The notes under the pieces are model-generated. The model was not told the origin of the DNA, did not search any database, and saw nothing but the letters and a program-made list of their open reading frames with translations. Positions 11,927-30,184 of a stretch of 64,000 nucleotides of DNA are shown piece by piece; positions within the stretch are counted from its first letter, which is position 1; the number at the start of each line of letters is the position of its first letter. Source of the DNA: Ruditapes philippinarum (lineage: Eukaryota); assembly GCF_026571515.1 (NCBI RefSeq), contig NW_026865120.1, forward strand, positions 1-64,000. The letters are read 5' to 3'. The position numbers and the translations under genes were made by a program.

Positions 11927-11988
11927 TATATAAATGGAAAGGTATGACCGGTTTGTTATTCACCCTGCAAGTCATAAACTGTCAACAG
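11927..11988 (+). promoter_or_regulatory. TATA box and short 5' UTR exon of LPMO1
   Basis: TATATAAA at 11927-11934, donor cag|gtaagt at 11988/11989, and acceptor ttttcag at 12132, just before ATG 12136. Confidence 0.65.
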
Positions 11989-12135
11989 GTAAGTTCGAAT
12001 GAATTTTCTGTTATTATTTCATTAAACTGCGAATCAGACGATATAGTTTGAGTTTTAAATGGAGATTTTAATCTTGTTGAGTAATTAAAGGATAATTTTT
12101 CAAGAGTGTGAATATGTTTTTATTCTTTTCAGATC

Positions 12136-14481
12136 ATGGCTGTCACAAAAGCATTCTTCCTATTGGGCTTGGTAACGATAGTCAATGGACATGGTCGGCT
12201 GATAGATCCGCCATCCAGGTCATCTGCATTTAGATTTGGCTTCAATACACCACCTAATTTTCTTCTGGACAAGCAACTAAATTGCGGAGGAGTCTGGGTA
12301 AGTTACCGGTCAAACTACCGTTACAAAGCATTATCAATATCATATCATTTATTATACCAACCATTTATTCGTTAAATTTGAGGAAAAAACAAATATTTAC
12401 ATAAAATGAGATGTTATTTGTACAACGTTTATTGGCATGGTTCTTACTAGTATTTACACATCTTGAAATTATGTAGCATGCAGTTTATCACGGTAAAATT
12501 TAAAATCACATTGTTTAAGATCTACGCTAACATAAATCTTCATATATTTATTTATTTGTTTACTGGAGATACATTTCGTTTTGAAGTAGGTTTTTTTTCG
12601 TTTTTTTTTCTTTTTTGTTTCTTTTTTTTTTACTTTTAGGGTGATAATTTGACTGCTTCAAGTAAGCAGTAACATATAAATTAAAAATATGTCGTCTTAT
12701 TCATATGTTTTAAATACACAAAAAGTAATATTCCTACCGATCATAATACATATAATCTATTCTTCAGGCAGGGCATGTATTATTACACATCTTACAGCCA
12801 AACGGAATGTTATCCAGCCTCAGCAGTTACATTTTATACTTGTACTCATATCTATGTTCATTTTATTCCGAATAAAGATATATTACTAACATGGTTAAAA
12901 CATTCGGTTTGGGTTCTTTTAAGAATCAGTGGCAGGTAAATCATGGTCGTTGTGGTGTATGCGGTGACCCGTACCAGGGTCCACGTAAAAACGAAGCAGG
13001 TGGGGTATACGCTACAGGAACAATTGTTCATACATATAAAGAGGGTACGCAGATAAATGTTGTAATTGGTAAGTGACTGTCTTATTCATGCAGTATGACA
13101 TTATCAATTGCAGAAAAAAGTATATGCATCTCTTGAACGGAACAGAATGCGAATGTAGGAACTATATCGATTTTAATGTTAATAGAGGATAGGTAAATAT
13201 GAGCTTGAAAAACGTTTATCATTTATCCTATAACTTGCGTAAGAGCATTCCTGTATATTTACATTACAGCAATGACGTTGATACAATGCATTCTTATTAC
13301 AATCACGATTTATTGTAACGGAATTCCGAATAATTTTACAATCTCAACAATATTGATACACTAAATTTATAAACAATTAATTCAAATATAATATTCAACT
13401 TATTTCATTCTGCTGAGTTCCTAGTAAAAGCGTATTATCTTACAGACATAACTGCCCCTCATGGCGGATGGTCCGAGTTTAGAATTTGTCCTAACAACAA
13501 CATTCATAAAGCTGTCACACAAGAGTGTTTTGATCGATATCTACTGGCGACACCTAGCGGAGAAACCAGATATATTCATCAACGTGAAGCAGCTAATATT
13601 ACAATCCCTCTCGTGCTTCCAAAAGGTCTAACTTGCTCGCAATGTGTTCTACAATGGAAATGGAATACTGGTATGTAAACAATTCAAATATCATGTATTT
13701 ATCATATGATTTTATATAATTTATTCGAGTAGTAGTTTAAAATATATATTTTGTGTATCTTAAAGTGACAAACGTTCATCATGTCGCTACTATATATTAC
13801 AAGAATAAAGTGTCGGAGGACCAAAAACCTAAAAACATAAAATTTGAATTTCTTACATAGATCACCTAAGCCTTTTAAAAGAAATATATGTAAAGGATAA
13901 TTTACATATATGTTGAAATTTTTTTAATCGTAATTCATGGTATTCTTAGCCTGATTTTAGTGACATAGGTTAAAAGGATGATTTTTTGGTCATTTTCCAC
14001 AGTTACAATAGTTACAATAATTATTCTAGAAAATATTGTTATCAAATAATCTGAAACATAGCAAACAAGTCTTTGAGCTAGACATACATCTAATGGAACA
14101 ATAATCTCAAAAAAATATTTCAAGTTCTGTCATGTCAAATTCCTTTTAAGCAAACAGTTCAGGCTGTAAAGCAACCGAATGCTTATTCCAGCTATCTGAC
14201 TATTAGAAAATGTTAAGATACTGAAATGCTTTAAACTATTGACAGTTTACTTATTAAATAGATAATAAAACTGTAACATATCTTATTTAGCCCATGATTA
14301 TAACTGTGACACAGTTACCAAAGAATGTTGCAAAGGTTGTGGACCACAGGAGCAATTCTACGGCTGCGCAGATGTCGCAATAATAAAGACATCAAGCGGT
14401 GAAACTTCGTCAACAACGAAAACGACAAATCTTCCTAATGAACCTGTCGGTTTCATTCCTATTGGAAACAATTTCCCTTAA
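12136..14481 (+). CDS. AA15-family lytic polysaccharide monooxygenase (chitin-binding type-4 fold), paralogue 1, 240 aa, secreted
   Basis: Exons 12136-12297, 12924-13068, 13446-13670, 14291-14481 (723 nt, GT-AG, phases 0/1/1). An 18-aa signal peptide ends TIVNG|H. Motifs: HGRLIDPPSRSS, CGVCGDP, NEAGG, TAPHGGWSEFRIC, CSQCVLQW, GCGPQEQFYGCADV. An S/T-rich tail ends PVGFIPIGNNFP*. Confidence 0.95.
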
Positions 14482-14984
14482 GCCGTCAGCAAGCGATTTC
14501 TATTTCTTGTTCTATGGAATTGAACGTGTTGTTTTGAGGGGAAAAGTTTGAAAACAGTTCAAATCAGTCACTGATTTTGCATGTTTGCTTGGGATTTGAC
14601 GGAAGAGACATGGCATCTGAAATGATGGACATTTAGATCGTTATAGTGAGGCAAAGTTATGTTTACATAGGAAATGTGCACATGAATGTAATTGGTCAAC
14701 AACGTAATAGAGTTTTGGAAGGGACATTTCATTGTACAGTTTTATTTCCATGTATTATTTGACAACTTGTATTGTAAATAAACCTTTGCTCTTTGTTTCT
14801 ACATGTACATTTGTATTTCTTTCAACATTTTGTCTAATGTTAGCTTTTTTATAACATGCGAAAAATGTAATATATTTACAATAAAAGCTTTTTTCTACAC
14901 TGACTTTTGGATGGTATATTTGTAGTTTTTTAAGTTTATTTAAAAACTTGTTTTCTATTAGTAAGATTGATTTTGTCAATTGTT

Positions 14985-15371
14985 TAATAGAAAGAGCATC
15001 GAAACACAAGGCTATCTGATGTTGCTTCTCGAGTATAAATCATATTGTCGAGTGTTTTGATGGTATTTCCTTTTTTTATCATAGACAAAAACAAAAACAC
15101 ATTCCCAGTCGTCACAATATAAAACCCCTGAAAAACGTAACCAATGAACGAGCATCTGAATATCGATCCCTTTCTCTGTCGTCAAAATACTTAAATCCCA
15201 GAAAAAAATATAAGCCAACCAATGTGCATGCTCTATTTCATTTCCAACAGACAATGTGATAACTAGAGTGCAGGTAACTAATACATGCACTCCAGTTAAC
15301 TCACTGCATATAATGTGTATACAATTTATCTCTGACACAATTTGAACACAAGGTCCCCAAACTATGATACA
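14985..15371 (-). repeat. About 380-bp dispersed repeat, inverted copy of 19888-20252
   Basis: The reverse complement aligns through tgtatcatagtttggggacc, gacgacagagaaaggga, tattcagatgctcgttcattggttac and gatgctctttctatta. Confidence 0.8.
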
Positions 15372-18269
15372 ACTTCCAGTTATATAGCCGACGGTACCTG
15401 TACTTGTAACAACATACACAATGTCTTAAAGTAATCATGAAGGAATAATGAAGGATATCAGTGTTTCTAAATAAACTATTAATAAGCATAGGTGTTGTGT
15501 CTTCTTTAATTAAGAAGCGCGACAAACGCTGCAACAAAACAAATATAAAATAAAATAACAAAAACAAAACGCAGCCTTATAATCAGAATGCTTCACTACG
15601 TTTGATTGGTGTAACCAGTATCTAATTATAAATCACTTTGTTTTTTGCAATTGAAATATCTGCAATAATAATATGCACTGCTCGGTTAACTTGTCATAAT
15701 TTTAATAAAATGGTCATAATGTCTTAATTCGTATGTATATTAAATGTCAAAGTTGTCTTGCTACACTATACGATTCCGAAGCAGACATTTGACGAATATC
15801 AGGATACCTGAATACGTGATGGCATTCTAATTCAAACTGAAGACGTGATGGCATTTCAATACAAACTGTTTATAGATAGGTTAAGTGTTCTTAAACAGGG
15901 TATTTTTTGTTGTAGATAATAACCATCCTGACAGGCCTTATACCTCTGTTACCAAGGCCAACATTGCTCCTAAAGAATTTGTTGACGGGACAGATGTGCT
16001 GTTTTGTCGGAAAAAGGTAACAGCCAGTTGTACTGACATATCCGATGAAAGTGTGCAAACAATTCTGACATATCGTGTGGAAACTCTAAAAGTTTTCGTT
16101 TAATGATTACCGCGGAAAAAAAGATCAATGAATAAAATGGGCCCATGGATCCCTGAAACGATACAATGGCTGCAACGTCGTGATATATTTCTAACTAGTT
16201 AAAGTGTGATATACATGTATTTCTTACTATTAAAAGTTGACTGACTAAACGTGTGTCCATATTTTGAGCCAAAGAGAAGAAGTTAGATATGGAGTGAAAC
16301 GATGATAAATTAAATATCTTATTCTAGTTAAAATGATCCTCACAATAATTATTGTTCGTTTCGTCATATTGCATTCGGGCAATAAAAGTACACATTAATT
16401 AAATTTCAATAAAGTGAAATAATATTTAATTTACAACAAGGATCGTCCTTGCAAAGGATGGTGAGGAGTAATGACAGTTGTTTTGGCCTTTGTTTTATAC
16501 TAAATGATCCCCGTATTAACATCGTGCATTTATCTCTATAACATTTTTTAATTCACAAGTCTCAAGAAAATGCTTTCTTGAAAAATCCAAAAGGTTCTCT
16601 AGGCTTTTCATCACAAAGGTACTAAATTAACACATTTTATCATCCTAATGGGCTTGTTAAAATCGTGACAGGATGTGTTTGGGTAAAGAGCGATACAGAA
16701 ATCCAAATGTAATGACAGAACTTCTTTCAGGACCCTCATGTTGCTTTTCGTTGACATTGGTTACCCTTTTTAAGAAAGGTTTGCATAAGGGTAAAGTAAA
16801 CTTATGTATAAAGCAAGGAAATGCTTGCTTGAAATTCAAACTATGTTAAAACATTTTGTTGTTAATCGTTTGATATCACACTCTTGTTCAAACCTTATTA
16901 GATAATGTTTAAGATATGTTTCTGTTACTGTTTTAATATGTGAGCACAAAGTTATGATTTTGTTGATGTCAGTTTTATTTTTGGATGAAATATTTACGAA
17001 ATATTCGAAAAATATCGAAGAAAAGACTATAGAATGATAAACATACAACAAATCAGGGAATGGCGCCTGCAATCTTGAACCGATCTTTAGAAAATATTTG
17101 GAGAAATTGAAAGACGTTCCTGAATATGGAAAGGTAACTGAACAGCTGCTTTATTGTAAAACAACACACACATTCATTGACTTGACTAAATTTGATGTTT
17201 TTTTGTTCCAGATTTTCTTTTCATTTTCTTTCAAGGCTTATATATATGCTATATACTAACCTCACAGAGGATAATAGCCATAGCTTGTCCCACAAAATTT
17301 GTATAATTTATAAAATATTATAGCAAACTTATCTATAAAAAAGTAAATTATTGTTATATTAACCCTGGAGTCAATATCAGATCTGTATGCATGTTTTCTT
17401 TTTTCTCTCAAAAAATCTATAATACATGTATGCATAAAATGTTAATGTTATATTTTTTTCCCGGTGACTTACATTGTAACCTGACGTGACGCCCATTTCA
17501 AAATGGCGACGCCCATACTGACGTCTTTTAAGGTTCGTCTCACAATTAACATTGCATGTTCTAGATAATAATGAAAAAAATGATAATTCTATTTATTTAC
17601 TAATCTTTGTTAAGCTATAATATTTGACTTTTTCTCAGCTAAATTCTAAATAGACGAGTACCTCTGTATAGACAATTTATAGTGCGCGTGAGTGAATGCG
17701 TGCGCGTGTGTGTTTATTGTTTTGAAACACTAGATAAGAGATCACCAATTTTTACATTAAAAGTTCACTAATTTGACCTTTGACAATACAGATATTTTAA
17801 TTTGCGGTACAAGGAAGTTGAAACATCAGAAAGAGTTAGCGTGTACTCCATTATATCAAAACTGTTCAAACGGTATCTAATTCCGTCCCTCTTTTTATCA
17901 CGGAAGTAAGATAGGTCTATCTAGTTCTTTTTCTCTTTGAGCTGTAAATATTTATGCTACTCGCCTTTGAAATAAGCATTCATTGTGTTATTTTAGGCAT
18001 ATTTTGTAATTTTAAACGCAAACATTACAAGCAAGTTTGCTAACCGTCTGAGAGAAGCTCGTGTTTATACTTAAACGTGTTTTGTCGCTTTAGTATGATT
18101 TTCAAAATTTATCAAACATTATAAAAAGGTATTGTGATTCATACAGACACATTCACAGAGAAAAAAGCTAAACCTTAAGTTTAGATCCAGAGAGTTTCTT
18201 AAGATGTATTTTTAAAGCAATTATTTTCATTTTACTTTTTTCGAGATACTCTTTTAGCAGTTTATCTGT

Positions 18270-18400
18270 GGCAACAGGGCCGAGTGATTTGCGCGTCGGC
18301 CTATAATTCAAGGGTTGCTTGCCTGGTGGGTTCAAATCCCGTCAGGGGTAAGCAAATGTTTTTTTTTTTCAACAAAAAAACTTTACACTCATAGCTTAGT
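18270..18400 (+). mobile_element. tRNA-derived SINE (CORE-type), truncated
   Basis: A-box ggccgagtga, B-box gggttcaaatccc, then aaactttacactcatagcttagta, as in the copies at 23.8 and 38.1 kb. Confidence 0.7.
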
Positions 18401-19887
18401 AATAATATCATGTCTTTTATTAAAGACAGATGGCGGGAAAGTGTATAACGTCTGTGTTGTATTGATACAACTGTGTTATAGCCAACAGTTACAGGTGTGC
18501 GTCAATATCTAAAGCTGCGAGTCGGATTGGTTGCTCATTGTAAATCATTTATACTTCAGATTAGACCTCAGGTAGAGTTACGCACACAATCTTGAAGCAA
18601 TGAAAACGTTTTTTTACATTCAAGCAGTTGTCGAATCTTTATTGTTTTCATGGCTTCAACTAAAAAAAATGTGAAGAGTATGCTATTTTTGGCCAGCTGA
18701 CTCTCGGTCAATATATAGGGACATTTTCTACTTCGTTATAATCGGCTTTTAAATTAGCAATGATTATGGATTTACTTTTACACATTTTAATAAAACTTTT
18801 CATTACAGTGAATATGGCGCCTCAACGGAGAGCCTATATTAAGATATAGAAAAATACATATAACTGAATTCTACGTTATACATTTAGCATCATTTATGAC
18901 ATTATTATGAAATGAACTCTTTAGAAGGAACGACATTAAATTTATATAAAGATTTTCATATTTATCTTATCTGTAAGAAGCATTTTTTGTAATGTCGCAA
19001 CTTGCGTGAGATTATATAACGATTGTCCATATGTTTGACTATAAATTATTAGCATTGTTTAAACTATTTATTGACATTTTTAAATATATTTCTATATCTA
19101 TTACAAGTTTGTAACTTAAACGTACAAGCCGACTTTTGTTAAGTTCATGTGGATTAATTAAATCAATGAGGTATTTTTTTATAATTGAATATAGTTATAT
19201 AACTGGAGGCGTAATATCTTCAAAAATCTAAAACGTTTTTGAGCCTTTCCTTTATAATGCGTAAATAACATATTAGTATAACTTGATTCATATTAAAATA
19301 TTTTTTCAAAATATAGGGATCAGTGGAGAGAGTTCTTTTCGAGCCAAGGCCACGTATCAATTGTTTATACTCAGGAGTGTGTTTAGTTTTGCTCAAACTT
19401 TCATCATCACATATTTGTTACAACTTAATATCTTTTTTCTAACTTTGTAACCTTTTTTAAATTATTTTTTATCCGCGAGGCATACACAACGAAACGTAAC
19501 GTTATATGTGACCAATACAAATACTGACGTTAGTAAATTTGATTTCTGTCTTTTTCGTTTCATTTTCTTTTCCTTCTTTATATTTGACATTACTTGTTGA
19601 CTAGTAAAAACATAAATTATAAACCACTTTTTCTATCTACATGTATAGATCAATTTTAGATGTACTGCCTGTAAGGGGTATGTTTTAACTGCTTGCATTA
19701 TTAATACTAACAAAGCTAAATTGTTTTCTTTTAATCTGGACAAAAAATAGCATTAATCATTTTAGAGAAATTCAAAATTAGTATTGATTGAATAATAGTG
19801 AACGGTGTAAACTATGAGTGCCGGCTGATCTTGGTCTGTACTGGTCACACTTGTATGTCTATTGCCGCCAGCGGACTAAAGGTTAAT

Positions 19888-20252
19888 TGTATCATAGTTT
19901 GGGGACCTTTCTGTTGAAAACGTGTCAGAGTTAAATCGCATACATATACATGCACACTGCGTTAACTGGAATGGATGTATTATTTACCAGCACTCCAGAG
20001 CATTGATTGGCTCATTTTGCCTGGGCTTTACTTATTGTGACGACAGAGAAAGGGAAAGCGGCAGAAATATCATATTCAGATGCTCGTTCATTGGTTACTT
20101 TTTTCTGGGGATTTATATTGTGACAACAGGGAACGTGTTGTTATGTTTGACTATGATACCAAAGAGAAAGAACACCAAAACACTCGGCAATCTGATTTAT
20201 ACGCCCCCTCGTACAACTCAGATAGCCTCGTGTTTCGGTGCTCTTTCTATTA
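19888..20252 (+). repeat. About 365-bp dispersed repeat, inverted partner of 14985-15371
   Basis: See the partner copy. It has two internal sub-repeats, each starting with ATTGG. Confidence 0.8.
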
Positions 20253-21198
20253 CATAGAGTGGACATATTTAGGATGACTTATCTGTAATACCTTTGAACT
20301 TGATGAACTGTTTACCGACATTTAAGAGAATGTTATCTTCTTGTCTGTCTATACAGCGGACTCAAACATTTGTAAATGGCTGTCAAAGTGTTGAAATACA
20401 TTAGCTATTTTCCATCCGGGTTTATGTATATGAGGTCATAGCGGAAAGTGAATTGTGCCGTCTTAAATACCGGAATATCTTGGTAACAGTACGATAACAT
20501 GTGTGTCTATAAAATGTACACAATGTACTATCAACTGTTTACAATGTATTTAATTTATTAACATCCTTATTATTCATAAGTTCATTTAGTACGTTTTATT
20601 TTCTTCCATGATTTATATCTGTGATTATAAACCCCATTGTAATGCAATATTTATTCTAAGAAATAGCTAAACATATTTTAAGCAGGAATGTTAAAGGTGT
20701 TATTTATATCATAAGTGATGAAATATACTAAAATTATTTCAAAATCTCTTACAATCACATTGTATTCATGTCTGAAGGGAGACATTTTTATTTTTTTTTA
20801 TAAATAAATGTAAAACTAAATCTCTTTTAATTAACGCGCATGAAATTGATATATAATTTTGTAAGAAAAAAGAAATGTCATCATTCCTTTTGAAAATATT
20901 AAACTTTAAATTTCTGTAGGTTAAGTAATGATATCGCGTCCTTTCAAAATTCTATGCTTTCGGTTAATGTTATTTTGTTTAATTTGAATCAAGATTCAAA
21001 CAAATATGTGTCTGAATTTTATGCTGTCCAATGTATTTTGTATCTTATTAATGACAAAAATAATAAAATGATTTAATGTACTTAAATTACGCTAAAATGA
21101 TATTTTTAAAGTCCCGCCTTTATATTTAATTTTAGGACATTTACAAAAAAATGAATGAAAAAAAAAAGAAATGAAAATTTTGTCTGTGTCTCCCTTTA

Positions 21199-22161
21199 TA
21201 CTGCCCTCACACATACCTCGCGACCTTACTGCGTCCTTACTGCGACCTTGCTACGACCCAGGACGCAGCACAGTCGCCATGGACGCAGCAGGGACGCAGC
21301 GAGGTCGTAGCGAGGAACCCAAGGACGCACAAGGTCGCAGACCGTCGGCGACTATTTTGAACATGCACAAAACAGTCGCAGAAACTCTGCGTTCTTGCTG
21401 AGTCCTGGTTAGGTCGCCGTGGGATCGCAGTGGAGTCGCCATAGTCGCAGCAGCATCGTAGTAAGGACGCAATAAGAACGCAATAGACGTAGTACACTCG
21501 TACTAAGGACGCCGCTGTTTCAACAGACTGTGGACCACTAGAAGACTGTTTGTATGCGTCTCCGCCAGTGGATGAAGCCGCGATTTCTACACACTGTGAA
21601 CCACTACCAAACTGCATATCTGAAGCGGCGACTGGGTCAACTTGTAGCACTTTAGAGACCCTCGCTCTTTTGCCTCGTCCGCCTCTCATCTTTGGAATAA
21701 TATGGATGATTTAACTTAATACTAATTAAATATACGTCTTCACTCGTTGAAGGTCAGACTCAGAATGAAATTTACTGGTAAAAAGTATTGTTTTTATAGA
21801 CGTAGCAAGAACGTAGTAGGGTCGTCGTACAGTCGCAGGACAGTCGCCGGACAAACGCAATAGTCGTCGTAGAGTCGCCGTAAGGACGCAGAGAACATAG
21901 CACAGTCGCAGCTGGGTCGCCGATGATCGCCGTGGGGTCGCCTTGGGGACGCAATACAGTCGCAGTGGAAACGCCATGGACGTAGAAGGGTCGTATTGAG
22001 GACATAGAGAAAACGTACTGAACACAAGACTGCAGAGCCCCGGACCGTCTGCGAGAGAAATTTTGGAAATTTGAAAGAAAACCAACGATTTTCGAAAGAA
22101 AAATGCTATTTTACTAGTTTTCAGGTCGCAGTAAGGTCGTGGTTTATGTGTGAGGGCAGCA
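21199..22161. mobile_element. PIF/Harbinger-type MITE (963 bp, GC-rich)
   Basis: TIRs TACTGCCCTCACACAT...ATGTGTGAGGGCAGCA, extended by cgaccttactgcg / cgcagtaaggtcg. TTA lies on both sides (21196-21198, 22162-22164). The interior is built of gtcgcag/ggacgca repeats and has no transposase. Confidence 0.85.
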
Positions 22162-22630
22162 TTAAAGCCGAACACGTTCCTGGCGCTGTTGGTATAACAG
22201 CTTCCATATCATGTATTGAAAATTTGAAGATAGAAAACGTCATAGCGCCTTTCTGGCCTTTTTAGTACAACCAATGTTGCATTTCACGAACAGAACTTGA
22301 AGTAAGAATCAACGTTTGCAAATATCTTCAATATGTTTATGTGTGTTTTTCAGTCTCTCCCGATGGATCTACCTGTTAAATTAGTAAACCGCCCCGCTTT
22401 TGGAAACCGGCTTTCACTCACGCCTGCTAGGGTACGTGAGGATGACGCACTTTTTCATTATCTCTCATGTACAGTCTCAATCAAACCGAGTCTGCAATTT
22501 TCATGTTATTTTGCTGTGATTAATGCTTCCGAGGGATAACTTTGTTTCCAGATATTTTTCTCTGTTTATTACGTATTATGCATTATGTATAATTTATTTA
22601 TTTGCAGATACTTAAACTGAATGAGAAAAA

Positions 22631-25600
22631 ATGGCATTTTCACTAAGAGGAAAGCCTATCTTCAAACTATCTATGTTCCTAACAACCCTGTTGTCAACTA
22701 CAACCATTGTCAAAGGTCACGGACGCTTGATGGAACCGCCTTCGAGGTCAACTGCTTTTCGATTTGGCTTTGCAACTCCTCATAACTATAATGATAATCA
22801 ACTTAGCTGTGGAGGATATTGGGTAGTTGATATAAAGTATTCGAATTTATGATAAATCTACTGGAAAATTATATTAAGTCCTTTGCAATTATTTAGACCT
22901 TAGTTTAAACTACAATGACGAGTAAAGCATATTGTCATGGCAGTTTATAGTCATGTTATCGTTAAAGGCCCTTTGAGCCCCAAAAGTGCTTAAATTCATA
23001 TTTTTCAAAAGCCTTTTACTCTTGATTTTTTGTTTTCTTTATCAAATAGGGCGTATTGACCAAATAGCAGTCGCCTTTTGCTTCTATGGCATAAAAGTAA
23101 TTATTTAAGTTAAAGTGATTAAGCATTTTGAATGGAAGTAAAAATTCCACTTCGTTTACATTTTGCCATATTTATGACATAAATTTCACTTCAAGGACTT
23201 CTCTGTTCAAATGATAAGCGCGTATCATGCTTCAGTTCCATTCTTATAACATTATAAAAACAATGCTTGCCTTTTTAGGGAAAATTATTAGTATTTATTT
23301 CTGCGGACAAATGTGCCTTTATTTACTCAAAAATACACACATAAAGAAAAGAAACAAATAAGTTTAAACTTATTTTACAAATTAATGCAACCCTATGTTT
23401 AGAATAATGGATCAGAGTTAGTATTTCAATGCTGAATACAATTTAAGCATATATTGATAATAAAATACACAAAGGTATTGTTCTTATTATTTGCAAACAG
23501 AATCAATGGGAACTGAATCAAGGACGCTGTGGTATTTGTGGGGATCCATACCAGGGTCCACGTGAAAACGAGGCTGGCGGGAAATACGCTAAAGGGACAA
23601 TAGTTCGCCATTACAAGGAAGGGCAGAACATAGATGTAGAAATTGGTAATTTATTATACATGTACGATATACAATAAACAGGAGTGTGGATGGTAGCGGG
23701 TTCAAGACGTATGGTCAAATCAAATGATTCTTGCGTTGGTTTACACAAATTTATGTTAGTTAGATTGTGTTGGAAGCAATAAGCATATTGAAACACTATC
23801 AAATCTTTTCCCGGAACCAACAAGTTCTAAGCAATGAGTGTAAAGTTTCTTGTTCAAGGAAACAACGACTTGCCCCTGACAGGGTTTGAACACACGCGGT
23901 CAGCAATCCTTAGATTACTAGTCCGATATGTTAACCGCCTTGCCACGCCGCATTGATTTGCCTTCTGGGGGGGAGTATGATAATTTTCTTTGCGCGGATC
24001 CAAATTCTATAGGCCTATATTTCAATACCCTTCGTTCCAATCGCCCAACTATTAGGTATCTAGCAAAGTTACGTATATATACTGGGATAAAATTAGTTTT
24101 TTTTTTGAGTGACTAATTATGTATTAACACAACAACTGATACTGGTCCGAAAAAGGTAACAGCCTTTTGACATTTTTTTTTAAACATATCTTGATAGATC
24201 TATTATTCTAAGCCTTGTACATTTCAAAAGTTTTGTATTATCAAATAATAAGCTTTTTATAAGAAAGTTAATGGGTTAAGTCTTTAAGACAAATAACAAT
24301 TTAGACATATTTATTATCTTCTTAGAATTGATGGTTGGACACGGTGGATGGTCAGAATTCCGGATATGCCCAAATAATAACATACACAAAGCAGCAACAC
24401 AACAATGCTTAGATAAATACCTTCTAGCGACACCTGGCGGACAAACTAGATTTGAACATGCGCACATGGAGATTGGTCTCCACAAATATGAATTAAAGCT
24501 TCCATCTGGGCTTACGTGCACTCAGTGTGTTCTACAGTGGAGATGGAACACTGGTAGGTGAAGTATATATCGATTCAATCAATCTTAACCAGTACGATAT
24601 CAAATGTAAGTCAGTCACCAATCCAGTGATTACACAGAGACATGTAATTGAAAATCGCAGACAGAAAAAAAGAAAAGTAAATATCCCCAACGCCATTTTG
24701 ATTTTTTATACCTTTACGGTATATATGCTTCAATGAAAAACTCCCAAAGACACCCTCACAGATAGTTCCTCCTTACATAACTTCGTATATAATTTTTCGG
24801 GATAATAAGGTGATATTGGATATTTCCCCTACGTCTCTTATAGGCTTACCTGTCCTTTGGTTAACCCATACAGCCATGTGTTATTCAAAGGTATATCTTC
24901 AAAATCATAGTATCATTATCCTATAATGCAAAACAAATTAAATGTTGTTTTTTTTTTCATTTTAACAAAAGTCATGCTTTAACAAGATAATTGATAAAGA
25001 TATGTTGAACTACATTTAGCGTAAAAGTAACTTTTATGACGCTATTTGGTTTATTGACGTCGTATCTTACGTCATATGACGTATTTACGAGAAATCTCTT
25101 TTTAAGTCCTATGTATTTGAGAGGGGGGAATAGTGTGAAGCGTGTTAGAATTAATGGTATATTATCGCTCATTTGCCTTTACATATGTATATAAAAGTGA
25201 TTTAAAGACACATATCGGAAATCTAAAGATTCACCCTTACATTTTATACAACTGACAGATCTGATTTCGGTACAAAACAATCACTTTTTAAGTTGAAAGA
25301 AAAATAGGCCAGCTGAGTTACGCATTACCTAATGTACGACATAACTTTGCTATATTTGTGATTCTCAAACTTTTATATGTTGTAAAATTTCAGATTCTAA
25401 CAACAATTGCAATTTTGTTACCCACAAGAATTGCTGTAACGGTTGCGGACCTCAAGAACAATTCTACGGTTGTTCAGATGTATCAATCGAACGTGCCACA
25501 AATATCGTACATTACGCGTCACAAACAACGCCACGTGCTCCACCACATCCGTTTCAAGAAAGAGTTACTAGACCAGAGAGACCAATGGGTTTCATACCAA

Positions 25601-25647
25601 TAGATGTAATGGGTCGTTATTTGAAGGAAGCCAAAATAAAAACATAA
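22631..25647 (+). CDS. AA15-family LPMO, paralogue 2, 272 aa, secreted
   Basis: Exons 22631-22822, 23501-23645, 24326-24553, 25394-25647 (819 nt, same phases as paralogue 1). The signal peptide ends TIVKG|H. Motifs: HGRLMEPPSRST, NYNDNQLSCGG, CGICGDP, LMVGHGGWSEFRIC, CTQCVLQW, GCGPQEQFYGCSDV. A P/T/R-rich tail ends PMGFIPIDVMGRYLKEAKIKT*. Confidence 0.95.
23750..23952 (-). mobile_element. tRNA-derived CORE-type SINE in LPMO2 coding intron 2
   Basis: Reverse complement reads gcgtggcaaggcggttaac...gtgttcaaaccc...gtttccttgaacaagaaactttacactcattgcttag...gttggttccggg. Confidence 0.8.
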
Positions 25648-26140
25648 AAAATATCAATTACACATGAATACATAATCATGTTTTACATAGTTAACAAAGT
25701 TTTAAATGAATTTTAGTAAAGTTTGATGCCCTTGATTCTTCTTTTATTTGATCTGACATTTTGCTATTTCAAAATTTCATCCTTTTTGATAATAATTTTA
25801 TATAACATTAAATATTTACAGCTAAAATTAATTATAAAGAAAGGATGTAAAAATCTTTATTTCTGTTTGGAAATACAGGAATTTAGACTGCTTTTGGATT
25901 CATTTTTTCCATTTATATTCTGACTCATTCTTGAATCTATAAACCACAAACGTCTTTATTTCATAGAAATGAGCAGTTTCCTCCTTCACTCTGTTATCAG
26001 CATCTTAAGTATCAATTCTACATTTCCTGTAATATAATTGGCGGAATACACCCGGAATAAAATTTTAAAGATAAATTTTAAATTAATAACAAGACGATAA
26101 TCTTGCTGTCAAACAAAGGTGCGCACGTGAAGTACATTCG

Positions 26141-26208
26141 TATATATATATATAACTGACTCTGCCAAACATTTCATACAGAGATAACTGGACAATCATT
26201 GAAATAAG
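26141..26208 (+). promoter_or_regulatory. Probable TATA box and 5' UTR exon of LPMO3
   Basis: A (TA)n-TATAA tract at 26141-26155, donor aag|gtaggt at 26208/26209, and acceptor tttacag at 27071 before ATG 27099. This is the same layout as LPMO1. Confidence 0.5.
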
Positions 26209-26689
26209 GTAGGTGATTTTTATTGCTCATTCTTTTTAAGTAAAGAAATAAAATGACAATTTCGATCCTGTTAATATCGGTGTTGCATCGGAAATAATAT
26301 TATGCCTCAGAACCGAATAAACTTTAACTTCTTAAAGAACCTGTAACTCAATGTTTATGGTTTTATATAATAAATATAATGCCCAAATGGAAATGTATCA
26401 ATATTGTAAGTTCCAAAAAGCATTAAAGATATTACCGAATTTACGTTTCGTGTTAATAAAGGGTGGTATTTAGAAATTTGTTTTCTAACACAAATATTTC
26501 AATAAGAAATGAATGCAATATATTTTGATGATTAAATATAATGTGTACAAATATTTCAATGTTTGAAAATTGTTTAGAAACTTAATTATATACATATATA
26601 TAATTTCACTAAAGTGTAGTAACTATCTTAATTACAACATACAGAATTTTTAAGCAAGGGCATACATGAATTTTATAAGGTATAATTAA

Positions 26690-26943
26690 TGATATTAGCG
26701 TATGTTAGATGCTTGTAACCTGCAGAAATATCGATAAATGTGAAAAGATTTGTCATCAATTAGCAAAAATGTAAACAAAATAGTATTTTGACTTCAATAT
26801 ATAAGAATAATAATTTCTAAAAAGCAACAGAAGCAAAAGATGCTTCAGGTAGCTGGCCAATGAGAAACTTTCTTGAAACTTTTGAAATACATTAAAATAA
26901 TAAAAAGATTTTGAGAAAAATATAAATCATAATGGGCCTTTAA
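26690..26943 (+). mobile_element. TTAA-flanked MITE, partial copy (same family as 11230-11585)
   Basis: ttagatgcttgtaacctgcag...aaaatgtaaacaaaatagtattttgac...ggccaatga...gggcctttaa is collinear with the copy upstream of LPMO1. Confidence 0.65.
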
Positions 26944-27098
26944 GGAAGGTTGTTATTTTAACAAACAAACTCCATAATATACAAGCAAATCTTAACCTTT
27001 ATAATTATCTTGTGTCTTTGACAGATTCTTGTAAAGTTTTCTTTACTTTCATTCTTTTCGAACATTTACAGATAACTACAAAACTGAAAAAGAAAGAA

Positions 27099-29340
27099 AT
27101 GCAAGGAAATATGTGGATAGTTTCTTCTGTTGTGTTATTGAGTCTGATCAATTTTGTTACGGGGCATGGACGGCTTATAGACCCTCCATCTAGATCTAGT
27201 GCACACAAACATGGATTCCCCTTAATACCAGTAAATACTATGGATCATCAATTGAATTGCGGAGGTTTCTGGGTAAGGCAATTTATCAGGCCGTTATTTA
27301 TCTATTTATTTATTTATTATTTTGAAAAAGGTTATGCGACACTGTCTTTGAATTTATCGGCCATTTCTCTATAAACCGGTGTTATTGACGATAATGACCG
27401 TTCTAGCTCAGTTTCCATCACTTTAGTTAAAACAAAAAGAATAATCATATGTAAATAATAAAGCATCAAATACTACAATTACAGTGTAAAGTAGCAAGTT
27501 TAAAAGTAATTAACGCAGTTGATGTTTTTCCCATTTGTTTCCGCATAGACATGGCTACTATATGAATTATTCAAAATAACATCAATTATGCTTTCAAGTT
27601 AATTTCATGAGAACATATCGTTAAGGTTTGCATAGTGTGACACTTACATTAACATTTGATAATACACTTGCTCTAATATTTCAGAATCAATGGGGAGTTA
27701 ATCAAGGTCGTTGTGGTGTTTGCGGGGATCCATATCAAGGTCCTCGTGAAAACGAGGCTGGCGGGAAATACGCAACAGGAACAATAGTACACACTTATAC
27801 AGAGAATGCGCAGATAATTGTTGAGCTTGGTATGATTGTATTTATAGGTTGATAAATATAACTGTTACTGTATCGTCTTTATTATAATATTAAGCACTGT
27901 AGATTTAATAAGAAGACAGAGCGGAGGTCAGTAGTCTTAATTGCAGATAATTTCGTTAGATTCAAAAGTCAAACTGTATAAAGGTCATGTCACGACTTTC
28001 CAGCCGTACTGATGGCAGGATGGCTTTAGGTATAAAGCTAATTCTTTTTTCAGGCACATGCGTATAACAAGCTAGCTTGATAGTTTCTCAAATGAAATAA
28101 TTAATAGCACAACTAAAGAGCTAGCGGGGAACTAATCCGAAGTCAGCGGCCTTGTTCACAGGACCTCTTACTTTATTAATAAGCATGCCGCAGAAATATT
28201 GGGACAGTTCATTAAATGTGCTCCTCATTTCAGATATAACTGTTGCACATGGTGGATGGTCGGAATTCCGAATTTGTCCCAACAACGACGTACATAAACC
28301 TGTCACGCAACAGTGCTTAGACAAGTTTATTCTAGCGTCACCTAGTGGCGATACCAGATACATACACCAGCGAAAAAGAGGCACATTAAGGATTCCACTT
28401 GTTTTACCACCTGGTCTAACATGCACTCAGTGTGTTTTACAATGGAAATGGAACGCTGGTTAGTAATAATCTCATTATATTCCATATCTAATACAAATCT
28501 TTGTATACTAAAGAAGGGGAGTTGGTTGGATCGATTCGTTTTCCGAAGAACTAATTTTCTTACCTAGTTAATGTAAATGGCATTTTATAAATCTTCAAAT
28601 ATACGTTCTGTCAAGTATGTTAATCTAACAAAAATTACAGAACTATGTAGCGAATTTCAAAGTATACCACTAAAAAAGCGACGGATTCAATCATACCGAT
28701 TGAATTTTTCACCATTTTCTTGCTAAATTTGTCGCCTTGGTTTATGACCGCTTTATATTCAAAACTATAAATTGCAAGTGTTAAGGGTTTAAATCAATCT
28801 CACCATCTCGACTCTTTCCGTCAATAAGTATTTAGTATGGAAGTCAAAATACTACTTTGTTTTCATTTTGCTTTCTTTACGGCACAAAGCTGCATGTTCA
28901 GTGCTAATTTTTTTCAGTCGTAAAACATCTTACGTGCACTTAATGCATTATGAAAACATTATTAAACATTTCTAATTAAAATGTATTTCTGAGGCATTAT
29001 GTGCCTTTAAAAGAAATATGGAAACAAAACATAATCTTATGTATTGTACATTACAGCCAGTAATTTCAACTGCGATCCAATCACCCACAAATGCTGTAAG
29101 GGTTGTGGCCTGCAAGAACAGTTCTACGGCTGCGCTGATATATCTATAATAAAACCATACAGGCCACCAACAATCAAACCATACAACGGACAATGGGCAT
29201 TCAACCATATTACAACTGTGAAATCAGACAGCGCGAAAATTGCATCAAAACCTACCACAGTGAAACAAAATTTCATTCCTCCGTTTAATCGTCAAACTCA
29301 ACCATATGGCTTTATTCCGATCTTCAATCGCCGTGGTTAA
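27099..29340 (+). CDS. AA15-family LPMO, paralogue 3, 275 aa, secreted
   Basis: Exons 27099-27272, 27685-27829, 28234-28458, 29057-29340 (828 nt). The signal peptide ends NFVTG|H. Motifs: HGRLIDPPSRSSAHKHGF, CGVCGDP, ITVAHGGWSEFRIC, CTQCVLQW, GCGLQEQFYGCADI. The tail ends PYGFIPIFNRRG*. AATAAA occurs at about 29387. Confidence 0.95.
28840..29010 (-). mobile_element. TTAA-flanked MITE fragment in LPMO3 last intron
   Basis: gtcaaaatactactttgttttcattttgct...tttctgaggcattatgtgcctttaa matches 62303-62493 and the reverse complement of the 11.3 and 26.7 kb copies. Confidence 0.65.
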
Positions 29341-30184
29341 CTGCACGAGGTTCTCTCGCTAACGTCTATAATTCAATGGGCTTTCAATAAAAAACATCCT
29401 TTTGTATACAGTTCATATTTACAAGTACATTTTTTGATGTATTTTATATGATTTTTGAAGAAGTGTTTATCTGCAAAGACAAGACTGTTTTACATTTTAC
29501 ATTTTGTTAAACGTATCTAATATTGACAGTGATACTTTATGTCATGTCTGAATGTTTTTCATGCATAATCTATGTTTTTCTATTGCCTTTTGTCTTTTGT
29601 ATTTTTATCATTTTACAATTTTATTAAAAAACACTAGTTACAAAATTGTGTTGTTTTTTTACTTATAAAGGATAATGAATTTAGTTGTCTAGATTCTAAT
29701 ATATAAACATGTTGACCGGACGGTTCTATTCAAAACATCATGTTTGTTCGTTCGTTTGGTCGGGTTAAACCCCAGATTATCAATATTTAGATATAGTGAC
29801 ACATCAGTGTTTGTCCTTCATTTAATGAGGACTTCTCACAATGAATCAACTTAATCCATAGAAAAGGGCAACATTTGCACAGGTATTAGACATAATTTAA
29901 TCACTCCAAAGACTTGAACTAGCATACTTAAGGTGCATGGACGTTACTTTAACCTTGCCATGAATAGTTAACTTCAATGACGATAGGTTCATAAACTCTG
30001 TTATGTTATAAATAACGCACATGGTGGGATAAGATAATGTTCATAAATATCATAATGCAACATGGTAGTTTGCATAGTCCGAACAACCAAAAGCGTGATA
30101 ATAGTTGGCTGACGCAAAGTTCAACCGTATCTCTTATCATCTACATCATTCATTGCAGCTGACATTGATGAACTAATGCTAGCG

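What the first reader, a model, noticed from the sequence alone, without database searches (positions are those of the whole stretch)
12136..29340. Tandem cluster of three intact, divergent animal AA15 copper LPMOs
Seen: three co-oriented genes share identical intron positions and phases, with a 145-nt second coding exon in each. All have open frames, V-x-G|H signal cleavage that exposes His1, a second His in HGGWSEF, and Phe in QEQF. Introns are not alignable and the proteins differ widely, so these are old duplicates rather than assembly copies. Established: His1, the second His and the axial Phe form the AA15 copper site used for oxidative chitin/cellulose cleavage. Inference: a lineage-specific LPMO subfamily kept by selection, possibly for shell/periostracum matrix remodelling or polysaccharide digestion.
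Basis: partly seen in the sequence, partly recalled or inferred. Interest (0 to 1): 0.8.

Follow-up and report, generated by a model that had tools for sequence, protein, structure and literature searches.

The report
Three clam AA15 LPMO genes in tandem
Three neighbouring, intact genes of the Manila clam encode secreted copper enzymes of the known AA15 family, which cuts chitin or cellulose by oxidation; two are shown to be transcribed, and they are old duplicates shared with other venerid clams, so this is a sound but fairly ordinary member of a known family.

Summary
Three co-oriented genes lie at 12136-14481, 22631-25647 and 27099-29340. Each has four coding exons, GT..AG introns in phases 0/1/1 and a 145-nt second exon. 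Each has a signal peptide ending V-x-G before His1, a second His in HGGWSEF and Phe in QEQF.

All four exons align in order to the Thermobia AA15 crystal structure 5MSZ. Exon 3 alone matches Pfam LPMO_10. A public protein identical to gene 3 scores 58 bits on that family, and its model matches 5MSZ at TM 0.93.

RNA contigs from three studies confirm five of the six junctions of genes 2 and 3 as splice joints. The sixth, gene 2 intron 1, is confirmed by a contig end.

The copies are 58-65% identical, with saturated dS and dN/dS near 0.1. DNA similarity is confined to the exons.

The window is Ruditapes philippinarum. RefSeq already predicts genes 1 and 3 as "uncharacterized proteins".

The tree puts all three in one Venerida clade with six Mercenaria genes and one Mactra gene. 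Gene 2 split off before Ruditapes and Mercenaria diverged (AU p = 0.006). So this is a venerid subfamily, not a Ruditapes-only expansion.

Unlike most mollusc relatives, these proteins end just after a GFIPI motif and lack the C-terminal 6-Cys module. Substrate and tissue remain untested. I file it as a new member of a known kind, of modest interest.

The parts
11944..11988 (+). g1 upstream 5' exon. It has an in-frame ATG and a GTAAGT donor, and is spliced to the acceptor at 12132|12133. Its true start is unknown.
   Evidence: The RefSeq model P0151 (XP_060569495.1) begins with 16 residues encoded here. The sequence was read.
12136..12297 (+). g1 coding exon 1: signal peptide, cleavage after VNG, His1 codon at 12190-12192.
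   Evidence: model; residues 19-52 align to 5MSZ 1-33.
12924..13068 (+). g1 coding exon 2, 145 nt.
   Evidence: (aligns to 5MSZ 37-83, E 7.8e-9).
13446..13670 (+). g1 coding exon 3: second His of the histidine brace at 13460-13462 (TAPHGGW).
   Evidence: PF03067, 25.3 bits against a cut-off of 23; 5MSZ 87-162, E 1.1e-17.
14291..14481 (+). g1 coding exon 4: axial Phe at 14356-14358 (QEQF), a Ser/Thr-rich linker, then P-x-GFIPI and the stop.
   Evidence: (aligns to 5MSZ 176-193, with Phe opposite Tyr184).
22631..22822 (+). g2 coding exon 1: signal peptide, His1 codon at 22718-22720.
   Evidence: The end of this exon appears as the loose end at 23500 in contigs of X9, X1 and X4.
23501..23645 (+). 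g2 coding exon 2, 145 nt.
   Evidence: joint 23644>24325 (cut +1), skipping 680, in X1 and X4.
24326..24553 (+). g2 coding exon 3: second His at 24340-24342.
   Evidence: PF03067, 17.4 bits for this exon alone; joint 24552>25393, skipping 840, in X9, X1 and X4.
25394..25647 (+). g2 coding exon 4: axial Phe at 25462-25464, then GFIPID and a 13-residue tail. The 3'UTR continues to about 25700-26000.
   Evidence: RNA contigs run unbroken through the stop codon: X9 record 17 reaches 25677 and X1 record 3 covers 25569-26018.
26179..26208 (+). g3 5'UTR exon. Its end at 26208 is fixed by the GT donor at 26209; its start is not defined.
   Evidence: Joint 26206>27070 (cut +2), skipping 863, in X4, and a matching loose end in X1. 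Sequence read.
27072..27272 (+). g3 exon holding the ATG (27099), the signal peptide and the His1 codon at 27165-27167.
   Evidence: joint 27271>27684, skipping 412, in X9, X1 and X4.
27685..27829 (+). g3 coding exon 2, 145 nt.
   Evidence: joint 27828>28233, skipping 404, in X9 and X1.
28234..28458 (+). g3 coding exon 3: second His at 28248-28250.
   Evidence: PF03067, 20.4 bits for this exon alone; joint 28457>29056, skipping 598, in X9 and X1.
29057..29340 (+). g3 coding exon 4: axial Phe at 29122-29124, a long linker, then P-Y-GFIPI and the stop.
   Evidence: The whole model is identical to the public protein P0159 (LOC132727913, Ruditapes philippinarum).

Best explanation
The stretch holds three paralogous genes of Ruditapes philippinarum, the Manila clam. 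Transcription is shown for g2 and g3. Each encodes a small secreted single-domain AA15 lytic polysaccharide monooxygenase.

Inferred mechanism, from the sequence: signal-peptide cleavage after V-x-G exposes His1. Its amino group and imidazole, together with the His of HGGWSEF, form the copper-binding histidine brace. Phe of QEQF takes the axial, non-coordinating position. By family knowledge, the reduced copper centre uses O2 or H2O2 to oxidise a glycosidic carbon of a crystalline polysaccharide and break the chain.

The axial Phe is the state seen in the chitin-specific TdAA15B and in most chitin-active AA10s. This makes chitin the most likely substrate, but that is inference.

The three genes belong to a subfamily confined, in the sample used here, to venerid and mactrid clams. 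This subfamily has its own middle intron. It has lost the C-terminal 6-Cys module that most mollusc relatives carry, and its proteins end just after a conserved GFIPI motif.

The g2 lineage split from the g1/g3 lineage before Ruditapes and Mercenaria diverged. All copies have since been under purifying selection.
For: - Gene models are intact with shared intron phases.
- Pfam LPMO_10 matches exon 3 in all three genes (25.3, 17.4 and 20.4 bits). P0159, which is identical to g3, scores 58.4 bits over profile positions 1-183, starting exactly at the His after the signal peptide.
- All four exons align in order to 5MSZ TdAA15A: His1 to His1, H of HGGW to His91, F of QEQF to Tyr184.
- The AlphaFold model of P0159 has mean pLDDT 85.6. 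Its best PDB match is 5MSZ, with E 2e-22, TM 0.93, rmsd 1.3 A and 42% identity. That is far ahead of any AA10.
- His1, the second His and the axial Phe are each at least 90% conserved across 122 relatives.
- RNA contigs from three studies show five of the six predicted coding junctions of g2 and g3 as splice joints. A contig end shows the sixth (g2 intron 1). Word depth reaches hundreds to thousands on exons and about zero on most intron bins.
- In the catalytic domain dN is 0.19-0.25 and dS is at least 1.8 or saturated.
- In the tree, a starred 10-row clade holds g1, g2, g3, six Mercenaria genes and one Mactra gene. The AU test rejects the three window genes as one clade (p = 0.006).
- There is no trace of the C-terminal Cys module anywhere in the window.
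Against: - No enzyme activity, copper binding or substrate was tested.
- The signal-peptide cleavage site is inferred from sequence and from homology with the mature N-terminus of 5MSZ, not predicted with a dedicated tool.
- No reads were laid on g1. Its public model differs from mine at intron 2.
- The runs are coded, so the tissue of expression is unknown. The one raw-read RNA run (X21) had only a few reads on the exons.
- dS is saturated, so omega is only a rough figure.
- The two subclades within the venerid clade have support of 90-92%, not starred.
Confidence: 0.85

Rival explanations
1. The proteins have the LPMO fold but act mainly as non-catalytic chitin-binding proteins, for example as matrix organisers or pattern-recognition lectins, rather than as oxidative enzymes.
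For: Nothing here measures activity. Databases name relatives only as 'Chitin-binding type-4 domain-containing protein'. The two surface tyrosines of TdAA15A (Tyr24 and Tyr166) are kept as aromatic residues in g1 only. Reading the alignments, g3 has Thr at the first and g2 has Asn at the second.
Against: His1, the second His and the axial Phe are intact in all three copies and at least 90% conserved in 122 relatives. This holds under purifying selection over saturated dS. That pattern is what is expected if the copper site is in use.
Confidence: 0.1
2. This is a recent, Ruditapes-specific local expansion: all three copies arose in this species' own lineage.
For: The three genes lie within 17 kb in one orientation and share a gene structure. 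g1 and g3 are weakly paired in the tree (73/87).
Against: g2 groups with Mercenaria LOC128549609 and a Mactra gene (92/95). It shares with the Mercenaria protein a one-residue insertion before CCxGC and the tail GFIPID..GR.LKE. Holding the three window genes together costs 29.6 log-likelihood units, AU p = 0.006. dS between copies is saturated.
Confidence: 0.04
3. These are assembly duplicates or decaying pseudogene copies.
For: None beyond the tandem arrangement.
Against: Protein identity is 58-65% and DNA similarity is limited to exons at 72-79%. All frames are open with canonical splice sites. Spliced RNA contigs exist for g2 and g3.
Confidence: 0.01

Closest known systems
TdAA15A of Thermobia domestica (PDB 5MSZ), the founding AA15 structure
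   Same: All four exons align to it in order. His1 and His91 are conserved. Nine of its ten cysteines are directly aligned. The predicted fold matches at TM 0.93, rmsd 1.3 A and 42% identity.
   Different: - The axial residue is Phe, not Tyr184.
- Ala89 is kept in g1 but is Val in g2 and g3.
- There are twelve cysteines in the catalytic domain instead of ten.
- A linker and a GFIPI motif are added at the C-terminus.
- TdAA15A acts on cellulose and chitin in an insect gut; no substrate or tissue is known here.
TdAA15B and the conserved insect LPMO15 group I (chitin-specific; needed for cuticle turnover at moulting; PMC5823890, PMC9156745)
   Same: They share the axial phenylalanine and the single catalytic domain, and both come from animals that make chitin.
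   Different: These are arthropod proteins. No orthology to the clam genes was shown here, and bivalves do not moult. Any role in chitin turnover would concern shell matrix, periostracum, gastric shield or diet.
Other mollusc AA15 genes, including at least 20 further AA15-like places in this same genome and the Mercenaria mercenaria paralogues
   Same: Same family (PF03067 precomputed on all 120 listed relatives). Same first and third intron positions as the paralogues on C9212 and C15421. The closest are six Mercenaria genes at 57-64% identity.
   Different: Most relatives carry a C-terminal 6-Cys module after the GFIPI-like motif. The window genes and their six Mercenaria co-orthologues lack it. 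The middle intron, before D-I-T-x-x-H, is absent from the C9212 paralogue and sits elsewhere in the C15421 paralogue.
Bacterial AA10 LPMOs (for example CBP21) and entomopoxvirus fusolin
   Same: Same Pfam family (LPMO_10), and axial Phe as in chitin-active AA10s.
   Different: Only 12-19% identity and TM 0.36-0.44 on the query, far below the AA15 match.

Membership tests
AA15 LPMO (CAZy auxiliary activity family 15) | An N-terminal histidine becomes residue 1 of the mature protein after signal-peptide removal. | tested here: met
   A hydrophobic leader ends V-x-G directly before His in all three genes. That His aligns to His1 of the mature 5MSZ chain and to position 1 of PF03067 in P0159. Cleavage itself is inferred.
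AA15 LPMO (CAZy auxiliary activity family 15) | A second histidine of the copper histidine brace (His91 of TdAA15A). | tested here: met
   The H of HGGWSEF aligns to His91. It is present in all three genes and at least 90% conserved in 122 relatives.
AA15 LPMO (CAZy auxiliary activity family 15) | An aromatic axial residue (Tyr or Phe) in the Q-E-x-[YF] motif. | tested here: met
   The F of QEQF aligns to Tyr184. Phe is the variant reported for the chitin-specific TdAA15B.
AA15 LPMO (CAZy auxiliary activity family 15) | Closer in sequence and fold to AA15 than to AA10 or other LPMO families. | tested here: met
   5MSZ is the only significant PDB sequence match for every exon. By Foldseek, 5MSZ scores E 2e-22 and TM 0.93, against E 5e-6 or worse and TM 0.68 or lower for AA10, AA11 and AA13 (model of P0159, which equals g3).
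AA15 LPMO (CAZy auxiliary activity family 15) | The conserved cysteine framework (ten Cys, five disulfides in TdAA15A). | tested here: inconclusive
   Nine of the ten are directly aligned by HMMER. The tenth lies in an unaligned loop, where the clam proteins have three Cys. Disulfide pairing was not examined.
AA15 LPMO (CAZy auxiliary activity family 15) | A match to the dbCAN AA15 profile. | not tested
   No dbCAN library is available here. Pfam PF03067 was used instead.
AA15 LPMO (CAZy auxiliary activity family 15) | Copper-dependent oxidative cleavage of chitin or cellulose. | not testable with these tools
   This needs recombinant protein, EPR and product analysis.

The most novel reading that the evidence does not exclude
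A clade of AA15 enzymes confined to venerid clams shed the ancestral C-terminal 6-Cys module while keeping the short GFIPI motif as its new C-terminus. It gained its own intron and then multiplied independently in Ruditapes (g1, g3) and Mercenaria (five copies). It now serves as a highly expressed, freely secreted oxidase for dietary or gut-associated chitin or cellulose. That would be a bivalve parallel to the digestive AA15 expansion of the firebrat.
Probability: 0.2. Interest if true: 0.5.

Novelty: new member of a known kind. Interest (0 to 1): 0.3.

Why it matters
My literature searches found no biochemically characterised mollusc AA15, although the family has been known in molluscs since 2018. 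Bivalves both make chitin (shell matrix, periostracum, gastric shield) and eat it (diatoms, zooplankton debris).

This locus offers three intact, compact paralogues without a binding module; two are shown transcribed. That makes them convenient to express and compare. The venerid-specific loss of the C-terminal module gives a natural contrast with full-length relatives in the same genome.

Beyond that, the finding is a routine family assignment. It also corrects one public gene model: g1 carries a 23-residue insertion next to the catalytic His in XP_060569495.1.

Tried and rejected
- Per-exon Pfam scans of exons 1, 2 and 4 gave no LPMO hit. These pieces are too short for the profile; the PDB sequence search resolved them instead.
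- I tested whether the short C-termini hide an unannotated last exon encoding the 6-Cys module of relatives. A tblastn of ten such modules against the whole window found nothing. RNA contigs run straight through the g2 stop codon into the 3'UTR.
- I considered that the module was lost by dropping a terminal exon. The paralogue P0167 encodes QEQF, the linker, GFIPI and the module in one exon, so this is not supported. The GTAATG after GFIPID in g2 is probably coincidental.
- A contig end in X1 at 25393 first looked like a g1-exon-3 to g2-exon-4 chimera. The 20 letters differ from g1 by one base and from g2 by two, so it may simply be a g2 allele.
Mercenaria synteny and the RefSeq annotation status of g2 could therefore not be checked.
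- The literature searches for clam or bivalve AA15 studies found no characterisation.
- The runs are coded, so mantle against digestive-gland expression could not be read.
Full report
WHAT IS THERE

Translating the region and locating splice sites gives three co-oriented genes on the + strand:
- g1: 12136-12297, 12924-13068, 13446-13670, 14291-14481 (240 aa).
- g2: 22631-22822, 23501-23645, 24326-24553, 25394-25647 (272 aa).
- g3: 27099-27272, 27685-27829, 28234-28458, 29057-29340 (275 aa).

All nine introns are GT..AG. The intron phases are 0, 1, 1 in each gene and the second coding exon is 145 nt in each. A tblastn of the g3 exons against the whole window finds exactly these three copies.

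At the DNA level only the exons resemble each other, at 72-79% identity, so the introns do not align. Each protein has a hydrophobic leader ending V-x-G directly before His, then HGGWSEF and QEQF.

HOW THE SEARCHES WERE DONE

The step of handing a joined model to a search tool was left out.

Two public proteins came back from the searches. P0159 is identical to my g3 model. P0151 is g1 with two differences. These stored public proteins were used for the whole-protein Pfam scan and the structure prediction.

Exons were joined only inside scripts, for the local alignment, dN/dS and the tree.

FAMILY ASSIGNMENT

Exon 3 alone matches Pfam PF03067 (LPMO_10) in all three genes. g1 scores 25.3 bits, above the 23-bit cut-off.

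Against PDB sequences, each g1 exon has the Thermobia domestica AA15 (5MSZ) as its only clear match, and the four matches fall in order:
- exon 1 aligns to residues 1-33;
- exon 2 to residues 37-83;
- exon 3 to residues 87-162, E 1.1e-17;
- exon 4 to residues 176-193.

In these alignments the His after the signal peptide is His1 and the H of HGGW is His91. The residue two before it is Ala89 in g1 and Val in g2 and g3. The F of QEQF lies opposite Tyr184.

P0159 (equal to g3) scores 58.4 bits on PF03067 over the whole profile, starting exactly at residue 23, the His. Its AlphaFold model has mean pLDDT 85.6, with the tail after residue 220 disordered. The best Foldseek match is 5MSZ at E 2e-22, TM 0.93, rmsd 1.3 A and 42% identity. 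AA10, AA13 and AA11 entries follow at E 5e-6 or worse.

The AA15 assignment is therefore firm. Activity itself is inferred.

The founding paper (PMC5823890) reports Tyr184 as the axial residue of TdAA15A. Phe occurs in a minority of Thermobia enzymes, including the chitin-specific TdAA15B, as in most chitin-active AA10s.

Among the 122 mainly mollusc relatives aligned here, Phe at this position is at least 90% conserved. So Phe is normal for this branch of the family, and it points weakly towards chitin.

EXPRESSION

Runs labelled with the same coded organism, and four RNA-seq runs labelled 'mollusc metagenome', hold 26-46% of the words of 22600-29400. That is about the exonic share of the stretch.

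I laid contigs of three runs from three studies, plus one raw-read run, on 23450-29400. The contigs show these joints:
- 23645|24326 and 24553|25394 (g2 introns 2 and 3);
- 27272|27685, 27829|28234 and 28458|29057 (all g3 coding introns);
- a 5'UTR intron of g3 at 26209-27071;
- the end of g2 exon 1 as the loose end in front of exon 2.

Word depth is in the hundreds to thousands on exons and about zero on most intron bins. The exceptions are two repeat-like intron stretches. Contigs run straight through the g2 stop codon into a 3'UTR.

The raw-read run had only a few reads on the exons. The tissues are unknown because the runs are coded.

ORGANISM AND PRIOR ANNOTATION

A profile of the three exon-3 peptides found 1191 relatives among 1.84 billion representatives. 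The best cluster contains XP_060569495.1, 'uncharacterized protein LOC132727917' of Ruditapes philippinarum.

That protein (P0151) is g1 with two differences:
- a 16-residue N-terminal extension from an upstream exon at 11944-11988;
- a 23-residue insertion just before D-I-T-A-P-H.

In this assembly the insertion would need an acceptor at 13377 preceded by AA, not AG. The canonical acceptor at 13445|13446 gives the form that matches g2, g3 and 5MSZ.

P0159, LOC132727913 of the same species, equals g3 exactly. No protein matching g2 appeared in the search.

The window is therefore Manila clam. Two of the three genes are already predicted publicly, but neither is named as an LPMO there.

AGE AND SELECTION

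The proteins are 58-65% identical. In the catalytic domain dN is 0.19-0.25. dS is 1.8-2.4, or too saturated to compute for g1-g2. Omega is about 0.1, and 0.2-0.3 in the tails. With dS saturated, omega is only a rough figure, but purifying selection is clear.

PHYLOGENY

The closest relatives of P0151 are six Mercenaria mercenaria proteins at 57-64% identity, all on one 74-Mb record. Next comes g3. Then a broad field of mollusc AA15s follows at about 50% or less.

I built a maximum-likelihood tree of 44 proteins: the three models, 37 mollusc proteins, one unnamed environmental protein (P0005) and three outgroups. It shows:
- a starred clade (100/98) of g1, g2, g3, the six Mercenaria genes and one Mactra gene;
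- Dreissena and Mya genes as its sister group (99/97);
- inside the clade, g2 grouped with Mercenaria LOC128549609 and the Mactra gene (92/95);
- g1 and g3 grouped with the other five Mercenaria genes (90/91);
- g1 and g3 only weakly paired with each other (73/87).

g2 and LOC128549609 also share a one-residue insertion before CCxGC and the tail GFIPID..GR.LKE. Forcing the three window genes into one clade costs 29.6 log-likelihood units, AU p = 0.006.

So the subfamily is specific to the venerid or heterodont lineage and has expanded locally. The g2 versus g1/g3 split is older than the Ruditapes-Mercenaria divergence.

FAMILY CONTEXT IN THE GENOME

A search of the 1.4-Gb assembly with g3 exon 3 finds 27 places on some 18 contigs. 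Ten further places exceed the PF03067 cut-off. Other multi-copy contigs are C6216, C15421 and C7256. The AA15 family is thus large in this clam, and tandem pairs are common.

The nearest non-window gene (C11029 and C9212, probably two haplotype copies) is the orthologue of Mercenaria LOC123534789. It has the equivalents of window exons 2 and 3 in one exon. The C15421 gene (LOC132734272) has its middle intron at a different position. The first and third introns are shared. The middle intron of the window genes is a subfamily feature.

THE C-TERMINUS

Most mollusc relatives continue after a GF[IL]P[IV]-like motif into a 6-Cys module of about 45 residues that Pfam does not recognise. The three window proteins and their six Mercenaria relatives stop a few residues after GFIPI.

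No remnant of the module exists in the window. The Mactra member of the clade still has it. This implies that the module was lost within the venerid lineage, once or more than once.

The tail after residue 220 has low confidence in the model.

FUNCTION

Shown here:
- the genes are intact, and two of them are transcribed and spliced as predicted;
- the proteins have the AA15 fold and the three copper-site positions, under purifying selection.

Inferred:
- secretion with cleavage before His1;
- copper binding;
- oxidative cleavage, with chitin as the most likely substrate because of the axial Phe.

The biological role is open. In the Pacific oyster, a single-nucleus atlas reports two 'chitin-binding type-4' proteins together with a chitin synthase in one mantle cell type. 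This shows that some bivalve AA15s are mantle genes. In a shipworm, host AA15s were barely expressed in digestive organs. Neither result concerns this subfamily.

VERDICT

This is a correct and careful first reading of an ordinary thing. It is a tandem group of AA15 LPMO paralogues in a mollusc, from a family known in molluscs since 2018, and two of the three genes are already predicted in RefSeq.

What this check adds:
- the venerid-specific subfamily definition: its own middle intron, loss of the C-terminal module, and retention of GFIPI;
- the dating of the duplications relative to Mercenaria;
- RNA support for the junctions of g2 and g3;
- the flaw in the public g1 model.

Noticed in passing
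window 13377-13445 and 11944-11988: The RefSeq protein for g1 (XP_060569495.1) carries a 23-residue insertion directly before the catalytic second His. In this assembly its acceptor would be preceded by AA, not AG. It also starts at an upstream in-frame ATG in a 5' exon. The paralogues and 5MSZ favour the shorter form.
   Followed up: partly
window 14446-14481, 25585-25647, 29305-29340: All three proteins, and their six Mercenaria relatives, end a few residues after a conserved P-x-GFIPI motif. In most other mollusc AA15s, including paralogues in this genome, the same motif precedes a 6-Cys module of about 45 residues that Pfam does not recognise. The window has no trace of that module.
   Followed up: partly
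window 23848-24046 and 28823-29021 (introns of g2 and g3): There is very high RNA depth on both strands, with many loose read ends and internal joints. This is typical of a dispersed repeat that is transcribed elsewhere.
   Followed up: no
window 15033-15163 and 20072-20202: An inverted repeat of 131 nt, 85% complementary, lies in the 8-kb spacer between g1 and g2. Similar short ORFs sit on both arms, so these are probably two copies of a mobile element.
   Followed up: no
window 25393 (run X1) and 28458 (run X4): Two contig ends suggest divergent alleles. At 25393, 20 letters ahead of g2 exon 4 differ by two bases from the g2 exon 3 end and by one base from the g1 exon 3 end. At 28458, a variant start of g3 exon 4 would read N-N-N where the window has N-F-N. 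Many single-base differences between runs also point to high polymorphism.
   Followed up: partly
G000 contigs C6216 (about 164-260 kb), C15421 (24-41 kb), C7256 (234-246 kb), C11029 and C9212: These are further AA15-like loci in the same genome. There are five places within 100 kb on C6216, pairs on C15421 and C7256, and what look like two haplotype copies of one gene on C11029 and C9212. The family has roughly 20 or more loci.
   Followed up: partly
window 22600-22607, 12125-12132, 27064-27071: Each gene has an acceptor-like polypyrimidine-AG a few bases to about 30 bases upstream of its ATG. This acceptor is shown to be used in g3 by RNA, and in g1 by the RefSeq model. All three genes therefore probably have a non-coding or short first exon.
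   Followed up: partly
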